This document shows, one piece after another, positions 5,935 through 40,955 of a DNA stretch of 44,288 nt (positions are counted from its first letter, which is position 1; every line of letters starts with the position of its first letter). Made by a program: the position numbers and the translations under genes. Below the pieces are notes generated by a model. It was not told the DNA's origin. It saw nothing but the letters and a program-made list of their open reading frames with translations, and ran no database searches. Source of the DNA: Octopus bimaculoides (lineage: Eukaryota); contig NC_068981.1 of assembly GCF_001194135.2 (NCBI RefSeq), forward strand, positions 143,848,976 to 143,893,263, read 5' to 3'.

Positions 5935-6122
5935 TATTGACTGCGGCCATGCTAGAGCGCCGCCTTTAGTCGAACAAATCGACCCCAGGACTTATGCTTT
6001 GCTCACCTAGTATTTATTCTGTCGGTCACTTTTTTCCGAACCGCTAAGTTACGGGGACGTAAACATACCAACATCGGTCGCCAAGCGGTGAAGGGAGACA
6101 CACAAACACACACACACACACA
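5935..6122 (-). mobile_element. SINE family C, 3' half (5' part presumably in the gap 6123-6558)
   Basis: Reverse complement reads (TG)n..TTTACGTCCCCGTAACTTAGCGGTTCGG..GGGGTCGATTTGTTCGACTAAAGGCGGCGCTCTAGCATGGCCGCAGTC, matching 20290-20494. Confidence 0.8.
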
Positions 6123-6725: not shown

Positions 6726-8159
6726 GTGGGGAAATTTCGAACCTGGGTTCTCCTTCCTAAGGTATTTTTCGATGTTATTATTATTATTATTATTATTCAG
6801 ATCACTGCTTGGAATCGAACTCGGAATCTTGGGGTTAGTAGTCCCGCGCTCTTAACCATTGCGCCATATGCCCGTGGGCAATTATAGAGTGAATTTTTTT
6901 AGGGCTTATAAATCTAATATTTGCCTGTCCTTCCTTAATACCGGTTCCCATACTCTATTCATATATGCACTCGGTCTGCTTAGGAGGTGTTTGTGTCCTA
7001 GCATATGTGCTATTAGATCATGTGAACTAGATCATGTCCAAGTGCTGTTAGGTCAGGTGAACTCAATGAAGCCACCCATACAGCTCACAACGGAAAAAGA
7101 AAAACACAATCAGCTAGCATTCCTGGACGTATTAATAACACGCACCGAGTATGGATTCCGGACATCCGTATACCGCAAGCCGAACTTCACTGGACGATAC
7201 CTTAACTTCAATTCCCACCATCCATACAATGTAAGGAGAGAAATTGCTCAGTACCTAAAACATCGAGCAATGAATATAAGTAACGATCATGATACCCACC
7301 ACGAAGTAAGAAGCACAGTAACAGTCTATTAAGCAACAACTGCCCCAAAAACATACTATCTACTCTAATTATGAAGAAAAGATAGGATGAAACCTATAAA
7401 CTGTCTACAGTTTGTCTACCCTATGTAAAAGGCCTATCCGAAAAGATACAAAAGCTATGGGCCCGTATGACATCAGGAGAGTATTGAAGAGTAATACAAT
7501 ACTTCGCAAATATCTCCTTCGGGTAAAACCACAAATAGAAGAGAATATGACCAAAATCTGCGTGCACTCCATCCCATGCAGTTGTGGTAGGTTATACAAA
7601 GGCGAAATATGTCGCCCCCTCAAAATAAGTGTAGACGAACATCGTAAAGCTGTGACACGAGGAGATATTGATAAATCAGGTATAGCTNNNNNNNNNNNNN
7701 NNNNNNNNNNNNNNNNNNNNNNNNNNNNNNNNNNNNNNNNNNNNNNNNNNGTAAAACCACAAATAGAAGAGAATATGACCAAAATCTGCGTGCACTCCAT
7801 CCCATGCAGTTGTGGTAGGTTATACAAAGGCGAAACATGTCGCCCCCTCAAAATAAGTGTAGACGAACATCGTAAAGCTGTGACACGAGGAGATATTGAT
7901 AAATCAGGTATAGCTGATCATATGTGGAAAAATTGAGACCACCTCCCCCTGTGGGATGAAGTTAAAATAATAGACAGAGAACACTACTGGAAAATACGAA
8001 GACTAAAAGTAGCAGCACATATGCTAGGACACAGCAACCTCCTAAACAGACCGAGTGCAGATATGAATAGCATAAATAGCATATGGGAACCGGTATTGAG
8101 GAAGGACAGGTAAATATTAGATTTATAAGCCCTAAAAATTTCACTCTATAATTGCCCAC

Positions 8160-14169: not shown

Positions 14170-14886
14170 ACACACATACCTATGTGCATACATACATACG
14201 TTTATAAATACACCATCAAGTATACATATATATGTAGAAAGAAGAGAAAGATAGAAGAGGTATACGTAATCGGAATTAATGTCTCAATAAATAAAATAGT
14301 GTCTCTGTGGCTGTGCGTACTTGTGTCTCCGTGTACTTCTGTCTGTCTCTGTTGAAATGCGCATTATATAATGCATAAATATACGGACAAAGTTATTCAT
14401 ATGCATACAAGTAAGTATGTATATGAATACAAAATTCAATATAAGAAATTCTGTTTGTAAGTATACCTATTCATATCATGTACTTAAACACATTTATATA
14501 TCTATATATGTTCTCCCTTACATGTTGATGTACTTACAATTATCGTTATGCACACATTGATATCAAAGTGTCTATGTTTCCTGCGAAATCAACGATATTT
14601 TTTTTTACTTCGTTCTTTCACACCAATTCGCAGCCTACATATTGATATACTGTATCTTGTCTCATTACTCAATGTCAGCTAGCATTCTTACGCTGGCGAC
14701 AGCGGTATTATAAAATAGCATCGAGAGATATGTATAATATAAATCCTAAAAATATTAAATTATTTTACAAATTATTCTTCTCCTTAAATATCTAGAGTAA
14801 AATTTCATTTTATACTCTGTTATTATCTCAGGTGATACTTGCAGCCTTTAAAGTTACACACTTCGGTACATATGTACATGCACATA

Positions 14887-14975
14887 GTTTTTTTTTTCTA
14901 CTTGTTTTATTCATTAGACTGCAGCTTTGCTGGGATACCACCATTTAAAATGTTGAAGTTCAACTGTATCGAACA
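14887..14975 (-). mobile_element. SINE family C 3' tail plus poly(A), directly downstream of the 7SL-like part
   Basis: Minus strand TCGATACAG..CCCAGCAAAGCTGCAGTCTAATGAATAAAACAAGTAG(A)n versus the family C tail TCGATACATTCGAC..CCCAGCAAGGCCGCAGTCTAATGACTGAAACAACTAAAAGA (about 20419-20494). Confidence 0.75.
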
Positions 14976-15197
14976 GGTTACCAGCCGACAACCATTCATA
15001 GGTGCGATTTTGCCAGCTGCGTTTCTGCCTTGGGCCGAATCGAACCTGCTTAGTCAAGGTGGTCCTGATAAGCGCCATATCGATGCTGAGCTTAGTTCGG
15101 ACACATCTGAATGCCAAAGAAAACCGACTACCGAGACTTCCATCCTCAAACCAAGCCTCCAAATAGCTGGATTACAGGATCAATCCACAACTTCCCT
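14976..15197 (-). pseudogene. RN7SL: 7SL (SRP) RNA-derived sequence with internal deletions
   Basis: Minus strand is colinear with metazoan 7SL as recalled: CCTGTAATCCAGCTATTTGGAGGCT..GAGGATGG (Alu domain), GTGTCCGAACTAAGCTCAGCATCGATATGG, GGACCACC..TTGACTAAG, GGCCCAAGGCAGAAACGCAGC (helix 8), ATCGCACCTATGAAT. Helix 6 is shortened and part of helix 5 is deleted. Confidence 0.85.
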
Positions 15198-15256
15198 GTA
15201 TATATATATATATACACGCACACACACGCACACACACGCACGCGCGCACACACACA

Positions 15257-16470
15257 CACATGACAGAAGTAAATAGACGCCCCTATACTCATTAAAATTA
15301 ATATAAATTTGAAATTATGCATTCAAATTATTTATTATTATGATTGTGACTATCTAATATTTAGTAGACGTGCCCTTTACATTTTTCAATGTAAGGAATC
15401 TATTAGACATGCTAGTCTATCGATCAGATGACGAATATTCTTTTGAGGAATTTCTTGCAAAGTTTCATGCAGTAATCTCAAAAGATCTGATTTGAGTATG
15501 CTTTGTTGTTCTTTTTATGAAGTGTTCTGTTCATTATGACCCACAGGTGTCCAATAGGATTCATATCTGGAGACTGGTTTGGCCATGGAAGCTTTTTAAA
15601 GACATTGTCTTCCAACCAAACTTGGGTCTTTTTAGCCATGTGACAATGAGCCCCTTCTTCTATAAATAAAGAGTCTGTAATCATTTCACTACTGGAGAAG
15701 ATTGGAAGGAGTCCTTTCTACAATATGGACACATATTTATCTGAGTTTATGTTTCCCACACACTCCACCAGCTCTGATCGACCATTGCTCCAAATTGCTC
15801 CCCAGACCATCACAGAATAGCCACCGTGTTTCATTGTTGACTGCAATCTTTTCACGTCAAATTCCTGATCACAGAGTCTCCAGACATACACTCGACCACT
15901 ATCAGAAAAGACAGCAAATTTGGACTCATTAGAGAATATGATAATGTCCTAATGCTAGTGCCCTCTCCACCACTGGCCCAATCTTTTTTCTGATTGATAT
16001 TGTGGCTGGTTGAAGAAATGCTTCCTACTTGCTGCTCTGCCATAGTAGCCAAGTTTATGTAGATACCTGACAGTTGTCCTGGGATTGAAATCAACTTGTT
16101 CTGCTATGTCAGAGGCCTTGCAACGAGGATTAGACCCCACACTTCACATAACAAAGTGAAGGGTCCTGTCAGAGGGCCCTCGTCGACCTGGGCGAGGTAA
16201 TGTGGTCTCCTTGCCCTTCCTGGTGAATTGCACAATCACTCTACTAACTGTAGAAAGTGGGATCCCAAGTTTTTCTACGATTTTACTCTGATTAGGTCCG
16301 CATTGAGATTGATACACAATACGGCCTCTTTGAAATTCAAACAGTTCCAAGCCTTCTTTTGTGTGTGGCATGATTAAACAGTCAATTAATGGAAAATACA
16401 AGCCTATTCAAGCTAAAATAAGGATAAAACGATGCTTTATGGCGTCTCTATTTACTTCTGTCATGTCAGT
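15257..16470 (-). mobile_element. Tc1-family DNA transposon, defective, with TIRs
   Basis: TIRs ACATGACAGAAGTAAATAGACGCC (about 15258-15282) and its reverse complement (16441-16467). N-terminal [34 protein letters not shown]; linker YYGRAASRK; DDE C-part EGAHCH..WPNQSPDMNPIGHLW. Frameshifted. Confidence 0.92.
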
Positions 16471-20249: not shown

Positions 20250-20297
<48 letters not shown>

Positions 20298-20494
20298 ATT
20301 GTCCTCCCACCCACTGCCTGACAACCGGTGTAGGTGTCTTTACGTCTCTGTTACTAGCGGCTAGGAAATAGAGACCGATAGGATAAGTACCAGACTTTAA
20401 AAAATATAGGTACCGGGGTCGATACATTCGACTAAAAATTCTTCAAGGCAGTGCCCCAGCAAGGCCGCAGTCTAATGACTGAAACAACTAAAAG
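20090..20494 (+). mobile_element. tRNA-derived SINE family C, most complete copy, with internal (TG)n
   Basis: tRNA-like head GGTTGTGTGTTAAGAAGCTTGCTTCCCAACC..GGGTTCAATCC. Central CTTGTGAGTGGATTTGGCAGACGGACACTGAA block resembles a Deu/Nin-type domain (tentative recall). (TG)n at about 20255-20292, then the conserved tail. Confidence 0.85.
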
Positions 20495-23400
20495 ATGTTG
20501 AAATACAAAAACATATCAAGAAATAAGATTAGGATTAGGATTTACTTGATATGGATTTCTTACACTGGCAAAAGGAACTTACATGTTGTAAGTATTGGTA
20601 TTCATCTTCTGAACTCTGGTCAGTCCTGATAAAATCAGCCAAATGTTTCAGCAACCAGTTATTCTCGAATCACATTGAAACCAATGTAGCATTCGTTTCT
20701 AAGTCAGAGAGATTTGAGTGACATTCAGCTGCTATTTTTAATTGGTATGATTACCACTTAAAAAGTTTTCTTGTTGGATCAAAGACAAAGCTCAAAACTA
20801 TATATTACTTGTACTTATTTTATCAGTTCCCGACGGAGGAAAACAAAAGTCTCTGGTAAAGAATTCTATCCCCGGACCTCGATGCACGAAGCTAGGCGCT
20901 GTCAAGCCTTTCGTCCACTGCTCCACTCTGATTCTTTTTCATTCTGTATGAAAAGGAAAAAATAATAGTCTGTTAGAATACTGTTCAGTCCTCTAGTGCA
21001 TTAGGTTTCACACAAGTGAAGTCGAATTTCTAAAGTGGCTGGGTAAGTATCTATCTCTGTTTTATAGTACACAATCGGACATCAGTTATATCCATTCTAA
21101 AGCATCTTATCTAATAAATATCTGGAAGCAATTTGATTAACTCTATCAGATTTAATGTGTACATTTAGTCAAATAATATATGCAAGCAGTATAGAATATA
21201 AAGTTATATTATCCATCTTGTCAAAGTATTCCCACATATTGTTTCACTCGTTTTCTTTCACAAATATTCTACTTGACCTACTCTTGATTTTAAATGGTTA
21301 AAAGTTTCCTTAAAAAAATTATGATTGAAACCAGTTTTGATGTTCATAAACATTTTAAAACTTTGAAAATTATTTCACACACACACTTTATGATTCTTCC
21401 TTTTCTTATTTTTCATTCCACCCCCACTGCACCCCCGACATTTTTTTCTTCTTTTCCTGGTGAATGATATCACCTAGTAGGCCGCATTAGTCAATGTCAA
21501 ATACATAAAGTAGCGATGAAATTAATGAGAATTTGATTAATCACTTGAAACGTTTCTTTCGCCAAGCGAGTATTTCAAGACATGATGACTAACGGCGTAT
21601 TTGAAAATGGGTTAAAACAAATTTTTGAAGCCAACAAGTTTATGATAAATTATTTTGCTTAATATGACTGACAGATATAATCATACAGTCGTAGAATTAA
21701 TAATCTTTTATATAAAAAAAATTATAACAAAATGTTGTTGACGCTGATGTCAGTTGGGTCTGTAATATAACCAACTTGTACTTCCGATCAATTTTAAGGT
21801 TTGGGGGAAAGTGTATGAAAGGAAATCAATACGTAGAGTATATCAGACTTGTGACATATAGATATTACTTAACTAGTATGCTTTGCTAATATAAAAATCA
21901 TCATTTAATAATCTTCAAACATCTTCAGATAACGATTTCGACACATTTCATCTATATAAAGGCATTATTCGAGAAGACAGATTTTTCTTCCTTGTCATAT
22001 CCTTTTAACTTATATCAACAATATTTGAATACTAAAAAGATCTCATAAATAATCGACATAGAATGGAACGATAGATATCATCCGTAGAAATATAATCCTG
22101 ATTTGTGATGAGCATAGCTCAGTAAATTTTAACATCTTGTCATAAAACTTCAGTCTAATTTTTGTCTTATAATTTATTCAAGTGATGACTGACAGCCTAG
22201 AATATATATTGACATATCCTAGTAGATAACATCAATTATACAATATTCATGGTATACAATATATAATAAAGAGAATATGCTAAAATAAGAACGGCCACTG
22301 AAACATGAATCATAGTATTTTTAATTTGAAATTATGTTGTAGAGTCAGCACCATCGTCGTTGTCATCATCATCATCATCAGCAGCAGCAGCAGCAGAAAT
22401 ATTGCGACCATCACTGTTATAAATCATTTAGGCCTAAATTTACTGCAGGCTACTGTAAGCAATCTTTAAGTGCCCATCACCTATTGATAATTTTCGTTTA
22501 AATGTCTGAAACCTTTCTTTTCAAGGTCTTTTGGATTATTTCCAGTTAAGGCTTTTATAGTTTCTATAAATGAAGTTAGAGTTGCAGTTTGAATAGGAAC
22601 TTTAAAGAGTTCAATCGATTTTCTTAATCAATCTAGCATAACACTACTTTTGTATCAAAATGGCTGTCGTGCAAAAAGTATTTCATAGAATATGACTCTC
22701 CACAGACTCCTCATCCTCGACACTGAAGAATTCACGAACAAGTCACTATCCACACTTCTCTGCAGTAAAGCCCACTATTCGGGAGTACAAAAGTATACCA
22801 CTGTTAAATAGCTCAATGCAGATTTAGGGATGGTGTGTAATATTCTATTATTTTCAGTAACGTTACTTCCTTGGCACTGCACCTGTTACTGGTAATGGAT
22901 CGGATATTGCAACGTATCATTTCTTTTCGCTAATAATATTAATACAAGAGACTTTTCACAAAAAATATCAACGGGTTAACAATTTCAGCAGATGTTGCAA
23001 GAATAAAGATAGAGAACTGGCTGCAGTCTACATCTACGAAAGGCATCGTTCTCAAATCGTGTCAGTGGTACACCTATGTTCGTGGCCAATGTATATGGCT
23101 ATCAACAGATCACTCTATTTACATGTGTAAATGAAGTTTCCATTTACATATGTAAATGAGGTTTGTAAGCATCGTTTGTACTATAAATACAGTTTGTTAG
23201 TTACGATACAGTGATAGGTAAATTCCTCGAGATAGGCAAATTTCACGAGAATGGCACCTGAGATAAATCCGTTGTACTATCACCTCCTTGACGCAACGGA
23301 AATCGGAGATAAGTATCGTCTCTAGTATTTTGGTGGGGGTGGGGTGGGTCTAAAATGACGTGAACTACGTTCACAGCACAGAAAAGAAAGCTATTAGAAA

Positions 23401-26672: not shown

Positions 26673-28300
26673 ATGCTCAAACGCCCTACATCTTCTAAGG
26701 CGTCTGGCGGTGATCATAAGCGCTAGAAAAAGGTTATGATGCTCCATGAGAAGGCACAATTGCTGAATATGTTCCGGGAAGGTAAAAGTTATGCGGGAGT
26801 TTGTTGATATTATGTTGTCAACGAAAGCACCATACGCTACATAAAGAACGAGGTGGCGATCAGGACTACCGTAGCAGTAAGCTTCTGTGAACGTGTCAGA
26901 AAGATAACGATAGTGAGAAATAAGCACTTCGTCAGGATGGAATCTTCCTTGGCATTGTGGATCAGTGACTGCAAGAAGAAAAACATCCCCTTGAGCGGTA
27001 ACAACATCCGCGAGAAAGCGCGGAAATTATACCAGCAGTTCGACGGAGAAGACGGAGCCGAAGGCACCGAAGAACAGCAACCAAGATCATTGACAGCACC
27101 GGAGCCCGAAAATTTTCAAACCAGCAAGGGATGGTTTGACCGTTTCCAGAAACGGTTTAAAATAAAGTGTGTTTCCCTGCATGGAGAGACAGCATCAGCC
27201 GACAAAGAAGCCGCCGAGAAGTACCTTGAGACTTTCAGGTAGATCATCGAGGACAAGGGATACAAGCCGGAACAGGTTTTCAACATTGATAAGATTGGCT
27301 TGTTCTGGAAGAAGATGCCATCTAGAGCGTACATCATGAAGGACGAAGCCAGAGCCCCAGGATTTAAGGTACAGAAGGACAGAGTGATGCTAACTATATA
27401 TTGCAATGCTGCTGGCTCCATGATGAAGCCAGGACTTATCTACAAATCCACGAAACTGAGGGCCTTCAAAAATAAGAATAAAATCCTGCTGCCTTTCCAC
27501 TGGATGCACAACTCTAAGACCTTGATTACCAAATATCTAACTATGAATTGGTTCCACCGATGCTTCATCCCTCAAGTCAAGATACACCTCCAAAATGTTT
27601 GCATGGATTTCCAGGTGTTGCTTGTTATAGATAATACTGGTGGTCATTCTTTGGATTTGAATCACGAAGGGGTCCAAGTCGAGTTCCTCCCTGCCAATAC
27701 TACCTCCCTCATCCAACGTATGGATCAAGGCGTGAACCGTACCTTCAAGGCACTTTACACTTGGAATTCTCTCCAGCACCTTGTGGAAGCAATGGATTCG
27801 GACGACAATTACAAGTTAAAGGAGTACTGGCGTAACTTCACGATCGCATTGTGACTGTCAATCATCCACGCTACTCTTAAAGACATGAAAAACGAAACCC
27901 TCATCACATGCTGGAAGAAGGCGTGACCAGTGTGTCCAGGACTATGATGGTTTCTCACCTGAAGATATTCAGCACGAGACTGTCAGCAATGCGGGAAAAC
28001 TGGCAAAGGTACTTGGTGGCGAAGGCTTTGACGACATCACGCAAGATGAGGTCAACAACCTCATTGATGCCCACTCTGAAACCCTGAGAGACGAAGATAT
28101 GTTGGAGTTAAGTAAGTCTGCCAGCAAAGAGAGGAAGCGCCAGATCCAGTGGAAAGGAAGAGGAGGTTGAGGTGGGCCTGGCAATCGAACTTCTATCCGA
28201 CCTTTTAAGGATAGCAGAGGAATTGCAAGGGAAGGCGGAAGCAGGGGATCCCGATATGGTTCGGTCTCTCCTGTAAAACACCTGAAGAAAAGGCATCACC
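26673..28300 (+). mobile_element. Tigger/pogo transposase pseudogene (CENP-B HTH + DDE_1)
   Basis: One frame from ATG 26673: HTH KKVMMLHEKAQLL..VNESTIRYIK, CENP-B-type MESSLALWI..IREKARKLY..FQTSKGWFDRFQKR, DDE VFNIDKIGLFWKKMP / LLVIDNTGGH / LPANTTSLIQRMDQG (D-30-D). At least 5 in-frame stops; TIRs not found. Confidence 0.93.
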
Positions 28301-39907: not shown

Positions 39908-40955
39908 CCACTTAATGAAGTTTTCATAAATAACTAAGACCACAAGAAGATAATTGTTTTTATCTTAATGTCCTAAAAATCTTATTCAATAGTTTAAAGT
40001 AAACATCGTGATGTCAAGTTATCTTGATCCGGGATAAACATCAATACCATGGGATATACATAGCTTACGATGAATTGTAATCTGTCGAAATCAGAAATAT
40101 TGTCAAGGAAATTTAGAAATGTGAAAACTAATGGTCGAATTCTGCAGTGCTTGATTGAGAAGGAATTGTGCTGTGCATATTTAAATCGGTAAAACATTCA
40201 TTCGATTAATAATGATACAGTTCAGCATCTAACTTCCGTAATAGATAACCTTCACCTACCAAGTGGTAATTTAAATTATTAAGATAGAATCACCGTGGGG
40301 AACTTTCTAGGTGCAATGTCACGGTCTTTAGCCTTATCTAACAAGGAGGAATCAAGAGTAAGGTCGATTTGGAATTGTGAAACAATTGAAGTACCAAGTT
40401 TCGTCTTTTAGTTGGCTTAAACATTGTTCTTTATCTCTGACTCACTTTCCCATGCATACATACATACATACATACATACATGCAGGCATACATACACACA
40501 TACGTATACACATGCATATATACATACATAACATATGAATGCATACATATATGCATGCATGCATGCATACATACATATATGCACACAAGCATGCATACAT
40601 GCATACAATTCTTTGGCACTTTCCTTTTCTCTATCTATCCACATCCTCCCTACTTTTTCTCACTCCTTCCTCTCTATCTCTGTCATTGATTCTGTGTATA
40701 TGAATGAGCGAGTGTGTGTGTGGGTAGATTTTTTGTTTTAATTCTTGACTTGTTACAATAAATGGGTTGCGATCATGCTGGGGAGGGGTCTTACCATGAC
40801 CCAGTATATGGTATTATTTAAAGTTTGTTATATTTTCTATTGATCATTTCGGAATGATCTCTAAGATACAAGGATGCAAACAAAGCAACACAGGTTGTCA
40901 AGCTGCGTGCGACAAAAAGACACACACACGCATACATGCATGCATACATACATCG

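What the first reader, a model, noticed from the sequence alone, without database searches (positions are those of the whole stretch)
14887..15197. 7SL RNA-derived head fused to a SINE 3' tail: candidate 7SL-derived SINE in a mollusc
Seen (minus strand): about 220 nt colinear with 7SL RNA (Alu-domain CCTGTAATCCAGCTA..GGAGGCT; GTGTCCGAACTAAGCTCAGCATCGATATGG; GGACCACC; helix-8 GGCCCAAGGCAGAAACGCAGC; ATCGCACCTATGAAT) with internal deletions. It is followed without a spacer by the about 80-nt tail of tRNA-SINE family C (compare 20419-20494) and an A-run. Established: 7SL-derived SINEs are, to my knowledge, reported only in Euarchontoglires (Alu, B1, Tu) and hagfish, and SINE tails provide LINE RT recognition. 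Inference: either a member of an undescribed 7SL-headed SINE family that borrowed a LINE-recognition tail (an independent, Alu-like origin), or a single template-switch chimera. The degenerate SRP54-binding helix argues against a functional SRP RNA gene. No TSD was found.
Basis: partly seen in the sequence, partly recalled or inferred. Interest (0 to 1): 0.85.

Follow-up and report, generated by a model that had tools for sequence, protein, structure and literature searches.

The report
Lone 7SL pseudogene fused to SINE tail
A decayed copy of the signal-recognition-particle RNA (7SL) is fused to the last ~50 bases of the genome's commonest SINE, but it sits at one single-copy, silent, old locus, so it is a one-off retrocopy and not a new Alu-like SINE family.

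Summary
The 7SL homology is real. Metazoa_SRP scores 29.8 bits (E 1e-5, below the gathering score of 70) on the minus strand, 15191-14943. Other 7SL-like contigs of the same species match its two ends. The SINE part is only ~50 nt (14946-14898) plus A10 (14897-14888). That tail is the 3' module of a SINE superfamily with roughly 3x10^5 copy equivalents in this genome.

The 7SL head is single-copy. In a complete contig set of the species, one contig spans the locus at single-copy depth, and only five others touch any part of the head. Three raw DNA runs give depth 1-3. Three RNA-seq runs give no reads.

Three related species carry the same flank-tail-junction-7SL arrangement at 87-89% identity over the element, so the fusion is old and has not amplified. 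It keeps the S domain, lacks 7 nt in the A-box region, and does not fold like SRP RNA.

Best reading: a chimeric retropseudogene, made when a LINE reverse transcriptase copying a SINE RNA switched onto the 3' end of 7SL RNA. This is the U6/L1 type of chimera. The single-step mechanism is inferred; the target-site duplication is inconclusive. The kind is known; interest is low.

The parts
14947..15191 (-). 7SL (SRP RNA)-derived sequence, 245 nt, from near the native 5' end to the 3' T-run (TTTT at 14950-14947). It retains the S domain (helices 6 and 8) and carries internal deletions.
   Evidence: cmscan Metazoa_SRP 29.8 bits, E 9.6e-6. Other 7SL-like contigs of the same species match 15149-15192 and 14947-15008. 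Single-copy depth.
14898..14946 (-). 5'-truncated 3' tail module of the genome's dominant SINE superfamily (AAATGGTGGTATCCCAGCAAAGCTGCAGTCTAATGAATAAAACAAGTAG).
   Evidence: 84.6% identity to 20455-20493. Alignment A1. Raw-read depth jumps from ~1-5 to 150-1070. Contig homology of other copies ends at 14925-14942.
14888..14897 (-). A10 run ending the retrocopy.
   Evidence: Sequence. Other copies of the tail also run into A-rich tails.
15199..15279 (-). (TG)n(TA)n microsatellite directly 5' of the 7SL head, separated from it by CAGGGAA. Possible target site or half of a TSD.
   Evidence: Sequence. 4 of 5 family-C SINE copies in the window also have (TG)n directly 5'. The miRNA and scaRNA cmscan hits here are low-complexity artefacts.
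14860..14887 (-). 3' flank CTATGTGCATGTACATATGTACCGAAGT, a candidate degenerate TSD partner of 15222-15190.
   Evidence: 13/15 match plus TACAGGGAAGT/TACCGAAGT. Not significant against the window background (215/3931 and 168/3931 tiles).
20296..20496 (+). Reference copy of SINE 'family C', whose 3' module is the tail fused to the 7SL copy.
   Evidence: Summed contig depth climbs to 13.5 million at 20464-20479, against 45.9 for single-copy sequence.

Best explanation
This is a dead, single-copy chimeric retropseudogene.

Proposed mechanism: a LINE-encoded reverse transcriptase began target-primed reverse transcription on the A-rich 3' end of an abundant SINE RNA. It copied about 50 nt of the tail, then switched template onto the 3' end (U-tract) of a 7SL RNA molecule and copied it to or near its 5' end. 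The product integrated next to or within a (TG)n(TA)n microsatellite.

The fusion arose before the species with this window split from three sequenced relatives. It never amplified, is not detectably transcribed, and has since decayed.

Shown: the 7SL homology, the tail homology, direct same-strand abutment at the 7SL T-run, single-copy status, presence at the orthologous locus in relatives, and absence of RNA reads.

Inferred: that both parts arrived in one reverse-transcription event by template switching, and that the deletions are decay rather than features of a source gene.
For: - 7SL homology: (29.8 bits, E 9.6e-6, full model span). In one search, loose ends of other contigs continue as GCAAAACACCCCGTGTCGAGCTGTAGTGTG|ATCGC. 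That segment resembles the helix-5 3' strand of human 7SL as I recall it.
- Single copy:
  - in the whole contig set of run X4, one contig spans 14944-15196 at 100% and depth 45.9. Only 5 other contigs touch the stretch, each 41-62 nt long and at about single-copy depth.
  - same result for run X9.
  - raw-read depth is 1-3 on the head, against 150-1070 on the tail.
  - the head's 31-mers occur only in this species.
- Junction: high-copy tail homology ends at 14942. 7SL-like homology ends at 14947, right after TTTT. Both parts are on the same strand, and an A10 run closes the 3' end.
- Tail abundance: about 3x10^5 copy equivalents with A-rich 3' ends. That many retroposition events makes occasional template switches plausible.
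- Age: contigs from organisms B, C and D cover flank + tail + junction + 7SL. The ungapped stretches over the element are 87-89% identical. The longer spans to 14452 carry 13 gap letters.
- Silence and decay: 0 RNA reads in three runs. The fold z-score is -1.41 and the fold is not an SRP rod. There is a 7-nt deletion in the region of the A box, which lies at positions 6-15 of human 7SL (PMC7245038).
- Same 5' context as family-C SINE copies, i.e. (TG)n directly 5'.
- Template switching is the accepted route to such chimeras and to SINE module exchange (PMC7245038 discussion; PMC4758252).
Against: - No significant target-site duplication flanks the whole unit, and no empty site was found in an outgroup. 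One-step insertion is therefore not demonstrated.
- The source 7SL gene of the species was not recovered. It is unknown whether the deletions predate or postdate the insertion.
- One other short contig (X4 record 10) seems to join a similar 7SL 3' segment to tail-like sequence. That could mean more than one such locus.
- Copies less than 80% identical to this one cannot be seen with the read-laying tool.
Confidence: 0.65

Rival explanations
1. Two independent events: a 7SL pseudogene (a retrocopy or a DNA-level duplicate) and a separate 5'-truncated SINE insertion that happened to land at its 3' end, or the reverse order.
For: No TSD brackets the whole unit. The tail module is extremely abundant, so neighbouring fragments are common. 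5'-truncated SINE copies are ordinary.
Against: The tail fragment begins within about 1-5 nt of the 7SL T-run, on the same strand, with no intervening A-run or TSD. All three relatives already carry both parts. Exact abutment by chance is unlikely even at about 1 tail per 8 kb.
Confidence: 0.2
2. An old member of a genuine 7SL-headed SINE family, either low-copy or diverged beyond 80% pairwise identity, that borrowed the SINE/LINE tail.
For: The architecture (small-RNA head + recognised tail + A-run) is that of a SINE. Contig X4 record 10 may be a second 7SL-3'/tail junction. Extra copies of the 14947-15008 segment exist in organisms A (3), E (3) and B (1). The tool cannot see matches below 80% identity.
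Against: At most 2-3 other loci match even the most conserved 7SL blocks, each at single-copy depth. The extra contigs diverge from the window outside 41-62 nt, and one carries the helix-5 segment deleted here, so they do not share the structure. The S domain is retained and the A-box region is damaged. There is no RNA. No amplification occurred in any of four species since they split.
Confidence: 0.1
3. A functional, divergent SRP RNA gene, or a chance resemblance to 7SL.
For: Helix 8 and the 5' UGUAAUCCAGCUA motif are well kept.
Against: Against a functional gene: 29.8 bits versus a gathering score of 70, many broken pairs and deletions, no RNA reads, no SRP-like fold, and about 13% divergence between close species, twice that of the flank. 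Against chance: E 1e-5, and independent matches to other 7SL-like loci.
Confidence: 0.02

Closest known systems
Template-switch chimeric retrogenes/pseudogenes: U6-L1, 7SL-L1 and similar in mammals, and the tripartite chimeras in Magnaporthe (PMC2104539, PMC4476161, bioRxiv 10.1101/2025.02.02.635956; only their titles and abstracts were seen)
   Same: The 5' part is a small Pol III RNA copied up to its native 3' end. The 3' part is a 5'-truncated retroelement ending in an A-run. The two are fused directly on the same strand. The locus is single and inactive.
   Different: The 3' partner here is a SINE tail module rather than an L1 3' end. The host is apparently an invertebrate whose LINEs probably recognise specific tails. 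The TSD is not demonstrable.
SINE1 (7SL-derived SINEs): Alu/B1/Tu in Euarchontoglires and SINE1-1_EBu in hagfish (PMC7245038)
   Same: A 7SL-derived 5' part joined to the tail of an older tRNA-type SINE. That is the chimera formation proposed for the birth of the hagfish family.
   Different: It is not a family, because only one locus exists. The S domain is retained, whereas SINE1 families have lost it. The A-box region carries a deletion. There is no evidence of transcription or amplification.
Plain 7SL retrocopies (P7SL_MD in marsupials, P7SL_Cpo in guinea pig; PMC7245038)
   Same: A near full-length 7SL sequence, S domain included, followed by a 3' A-run. Such elements are not accepted as true SINEs.
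   Different: Those are 7SL + poly(A) only, and are multi-copy (over 12,000 for P7SL_MD; an expansion is reported for P7SL_Cpo). This one has a SINE tail between the 7SL part and the A-run, and is single-copy.

Membership tests
SINE1 (7SL-derived SINE family) | Head homologous to 7SL RNA | tested here: met
   cmscan Metazoa_SRP 29.8 bits, E 9.6e-6. Matches to other 7SL-like contigs.
SINE1 (7SL-derived SINE family) | Many dispersed copies sharing one uniform chimeric structure | tested here: not met
   One contig at single-copy depth. Only 5 short partial matches in the whole contig set. Raw-read depth 1-3. Limit of the test: 80% identity or more.
SINE1 (7SL-derived SINE family) | Internal deletion of the S domain with the Alu domain retained (this distinguishes a SINE from a retrocopy; PMC7245038) | tested here: not met
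   Helices 6 and 8 of the S domain are the best-aligned part. The Alu-domain 5' hairpins carry a 7-nt deletion.
SINE1 (7SL-derived SINE family) | Intact internal Pol III promoter and transcription | tested here: not met
   Model positions 5-11 are deleted, overlapping the A box at positions 6-15 of human 7SL (PMC7245038). 0 reads in three RNA-seq runs. Those libraries are standard cDNA, so small Pol III RNAs may be under-sampled.
SINE1 (7SL-derived SINE family) | 3' tail shared with a partner LINE/SINE, plus an A-rich end | tested here: met
   Tail 14946-14898 matches the superabundant SINE 3' module, followed by A10. The partner LINE itself was not identified.
Template-switch chimeric retropseudogene | 5' part is a cellular small RNA copied to its native 3' end; 3' part is a 5'-truncated retroelement with an A-run; direct fusion on the same strand | tested here: met
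   7SL homology ends at the T-run 14950-14947. Tail homology starts at 14946-14942. A10 at 14897-14888.
Template-switch chimeric retropseudogene | One pair of target-site duplications flanking the whole chimera | tested here: inconclusive
   The candidate 15-nt match is low-complexity; about 5% of window tiles score as well. No empty site in any available relative.
Functional metazoan SRP RNA gene (Rfam RF00017) | Score at or above the gathering threshold, with conserved helices 2-8 | tested here: not met
   29.8 bits against 70, with many non-canonical pairs and deletions. Fold z-score -1.41.

The most novel reading that the evidence does not exclude
The locus, together with the short contig that also seems to join a 7SL 3' end to tail sequence (X4 record 10), would be the remnant of a very low-copy 7SL-headed proto-SINE in this lineage. 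That would be an abortive, independent 'Alu-like' birth outside vertebrates, one that retroposed a few times before dying.
Probability: 0.08. Interest if true: 0.6.

Novelty: new member of a known kind. Interest (0 to 1): 0.22.

Why it matters
It removes a tempting false lead: this is not an invertebrate Alu-like SINE family. What remains is a textbook fossil of the raw material from which SINEs are thought to arise, namely a small Pol III RNA fused by template switching to a tail that the LINE machinery recognises. It shows that such fusions also occur in a genome dominated by tail-specific SINEs, and that most of them go nowhere. Here the likely reasons are a retained S domain, a damaged A box and the lack of the gene's upstream promoter. 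The locus is also a clean shared-insertion marker for the four related species that carry it.

Tried and rejected
- Whole-window Rfam scan at gathering thresholds: no hit. The homology appears only in E-value mode.
- The mir-297, SCARNA7, mir-1277 and similar hits at 15188-15372 are (TG)n/(TA)n artefacts.
- Self-BLAST of the element against the window: no second 7SL head.
- ARAGORN: no tRNA-like gene in the window, so the 'tRNA' origin of family C is not confirmed here.
- TSD search: only low-complexity matches.
- Empty-site search in relatives: organisms B, C and D all carry the insertion. Organism E has only fragmentary contigs that stop before it. No contig joins 14887 to 15192.
Similarity to family C is marginal, while other 7SL-like loci match it, so I assigned it to 7SL.
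- The true 7SL gene sequence could not be recovered, because only 30-nt loose ends are shown.
- Organism identity is coded and was not determined.
- Literature searches for 7SL SINEs in cephalopods or octopus found none.
- The first Pfam call failed on frame.

Full report
**What is in the sequence**

On the minus strand the order is:
- a Tc1/mariner-like remnant;
- a (TG)n(TA)n microsatellite (15279-15199);
- CAGGGAA;
- a 245-nt 7SL-like sequence (15191-14947) that ends in CAACATTTT;
- about 50 nt of SINE tail (14946-14898);
- A10 (14897-14888);
- a TG/TA-rich flank.

**Is the 7SL homology real?**

At Rfam gathering thresholds the window has no hit. In E-value mode on 901 bp, Metazoa_SRP aligns over its whole length (model 1-299) to 15191-14943. 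The score is 29.8 bits and E is 9.6e-6, against a gathering score of 70.

High-confidence blocks are the 5' Alu-domain motif (CCUGUAAUCCAGCUAUUUGGAGGCU) and the S domain.

The alignment shows:
- a 7-nt deletion at model positions 5-11;
- loss of about 15 nt in the 5' strand of helix 5;
- a shortened helix 6;
- a poorly paired 3' region.

The other cmscan hits nearby (mir-297, SCARNA7 and so on) fall on the microsatellite and are artefacts.

**Independent support, and a corrected boundary**

I laid the complete Logan contig set of a run of the same species (X4) on 14944-15196 at 80% identity or more. Six contigs matched. One is the locus itself: 100% identical, word depth 45.9, which is the single-copy level.

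Two contigs match only 15149-15192. Three match only 14947-15008, 14953-14998 and 14958-15002, at 81-87%. Beyond 15008 one of them continues as GCAAAACACCCCGTGTCGAGCTGTAGTGTG|ATCGC. By my recollection of human 7SL (…CAAAACTCCCGTGCTGATCAGTAGTGGGATCGCG…), that is the helix-5 3' strand segment missing from the window copy.

In species C, a contig at about 6 times single-copy depth matches 15008-15073 and continues likewise (GACTCTGTGTCAAGCAGTCGTGGGATCGCA). So these are other 7SL loci.

It follows that 7SL homology in the window extends to about 14947, ending in a T-run like a Pol III terminator. Similarity of 14990-14947 to SINE family C is marginal: 9 of 500 shuffles for one copy, and not significant for three others.

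**The tail**

The tail matches the family-C copy at 20455-20493 (84.6%; alignment A1).

Raw-read depth (about 1.9 Gb sampled per run) jumps from 1-5 on the head to 150-225 at 14928-14971 and to 650-1070 at 14884-14927. Contigs of other copies stop matching at 14925-14942 on one side and run into A/T-rich tails on the other.

I also laid contigs on the family-C copy. Summed depth rises 5' to 3' to 13.5 million at 20464-20479, against 45.9 for single-copy sequence. That is roughly 3x10^5 copy equivalents. Other copies continue into A-rich tails.

**Copy number of the head and the junction**

- The window holds no second head.
- The head's 31-mers occur only in runs of this species.
- Contigs: one spanning contig at single-copy depth in two individuals.
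- Raw DNA: depth 1-3 in three runs.

Even the most conserved 7SL blocks attract only 2-3 other contigs, each at about single-copy depth.

**Age**

Contigs from three related species (B, C, D) cover 14452-15107, 14452-15073 and 14452-15152. Each includes unique flank, tail, junction and 7SL part, with no gaps across the element.

Divergence is about 6-7% in the flank and about 13% in the 7SL part. The fusion therefore predates their split and did not amplify in any of them.

A fourth relative (E) has only fragmentary contigs that stop before the insertion. No empty site was found.

**Activity**

Three RNA-seq runs (about 5.5 Gb sampled) give no read on 14944-15196. The 245-nt RNA folds no better than shuffles (z = -1.41) and not as an SRP rod. 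The 7-nt deletion overlaps the A-box region, which lies at positions 6-15 of human 7SL (PMC7245038).

**Mechanism**

The observed features are:
- 7SL copied to its U-tract;
- direct same-strand fusion to a 5'-truncated retroelement 3' end;
- a terminal A-run.

That is the anatomy of template-switch chimeras such as U6-L1 and 7SL-L1. The papers listed concern such chimeras; I saw only their titles and abstracts, and the anatomy is from my own knowledge. Template switching is also the proposed route for SINE module exchange and for the birth of hagfish SINE1 (PMC7245038, PMC4758252).

With about 3x10^5 tail-primed events in this genome, rare switches onto an abundant RNA are expected. The 5' end abuts a (TG)n tract, as do 4 of 5 family-C copies in the window. 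That weakly suggests the same integration machinery.

The one-step origin remains an inference. The candidate TSD (TGTGCGTGTATATAT / TGTGCATGTACATAT) is not above the low-complexity background.

**Comparison with what is known**

By Kojima's criteria (PMC7245038), a SINE1 family needs many copies of uniform chimeric structure and is distinguished from retrocopies by loss of the S domain. Neither holds here.

The locus is best filed as a chimeric 7SL retropseudogene. That is a known kind, though I found no report of one in cephalopods or other molluscs. The host taxon itself could not be verified, because run metadata are coded.

**Residual uncertainty**

One 107-nt contig (X4 record 10) matches 14953-14998 at 87% and then reads TCTCACTCAAGGTGATGCTCCAGCATG, which resembles the SINE tail. 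It could be a second, independent 7SL/tail chimera or a paralogue. This is what keeps the low-copy proto-SINE reading alive, at about 8-10%.

Noticed in passing
window 15283-16350 (minus): Tc1/mariner-like transposase pseudogene: a frame with several stops, and a Pfam DDE_3 hit (E 5.5e-10). It lies directly upstream of the microsatellite. Raw reads show tens to hundreds of related copies.
   Followed up: partly
window 20456-20495 (+), also 14898-14942 (-): The ~40-nt SINE 3' module (…CCCCAGCAtGGCCGCAGTCTAATGAcTGAAACAA) reaches a summed contig depth of 13.5 million against 45.9 for single-copy sequence. That is about 3x10^5 copy equivalents, with a steep 5'-to-3' gradient, so many SINE families or truncated copies share this tail.
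   Followed up: partly
window 20256-20293, 536-553, 6107-6122, ~40915-40935, 15199-15279: 4 of 5 family-C SINE copies, and the 7SL chimera, have a (TG)n tract immediately 5' of the element and none 3'. Either (TG)n belongs to the SINE's 5' end or it marks a target or 5'-junction preference. The genome-wide check did not resolve this.
   Followed up: partly
window 14452-15152 versus contigs of organisms B, C, D: The 7SL part differs by about 13% between species, and the adjacent unique flank by only about 6-7% (about 2.5-5% in 14803-14883). Possible causes are CpG decay in the GC-richer insert or constraint on the flank.
   Followed up: no
X4 contig record 10, matching window 14953-14998: A 107-nt single-copy contig joins a 7SL-3'-like segment (87% to the window) to SINE-tail-like sequence at a slightly different junction. 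It may be a second, independent 7SL/tail chimera. Extra copies of 14947-15008 exist in organisms A (3), E (3) and B (1), and none in C.
   Followed up: partly
window 26853-27854 (+): pogo/Tigger-like DNA transposon ORFs: HTH_Tnp_Tc5 (E 1.7e-14) and DDE_1 (E 6.1e-28).
   Followed up: partly
window 7412-7936 (+): An ORF with the same ~45-aa segment (VKPQIEENMTKICVHSIPCSCGRLYKGE…DIDKSGIA) on both sides of an N gap. It is probably an assembly duplication inside a retroelement fragment. No Pfam hit.
   Followed up: no
whole window: The window comes from a draft assembly with many N gaps. At least 15 (TG/CA)n tracts of 8 or more units lie in 44 kb, and several gaps sit next to microsatellites.
   Followed up: no
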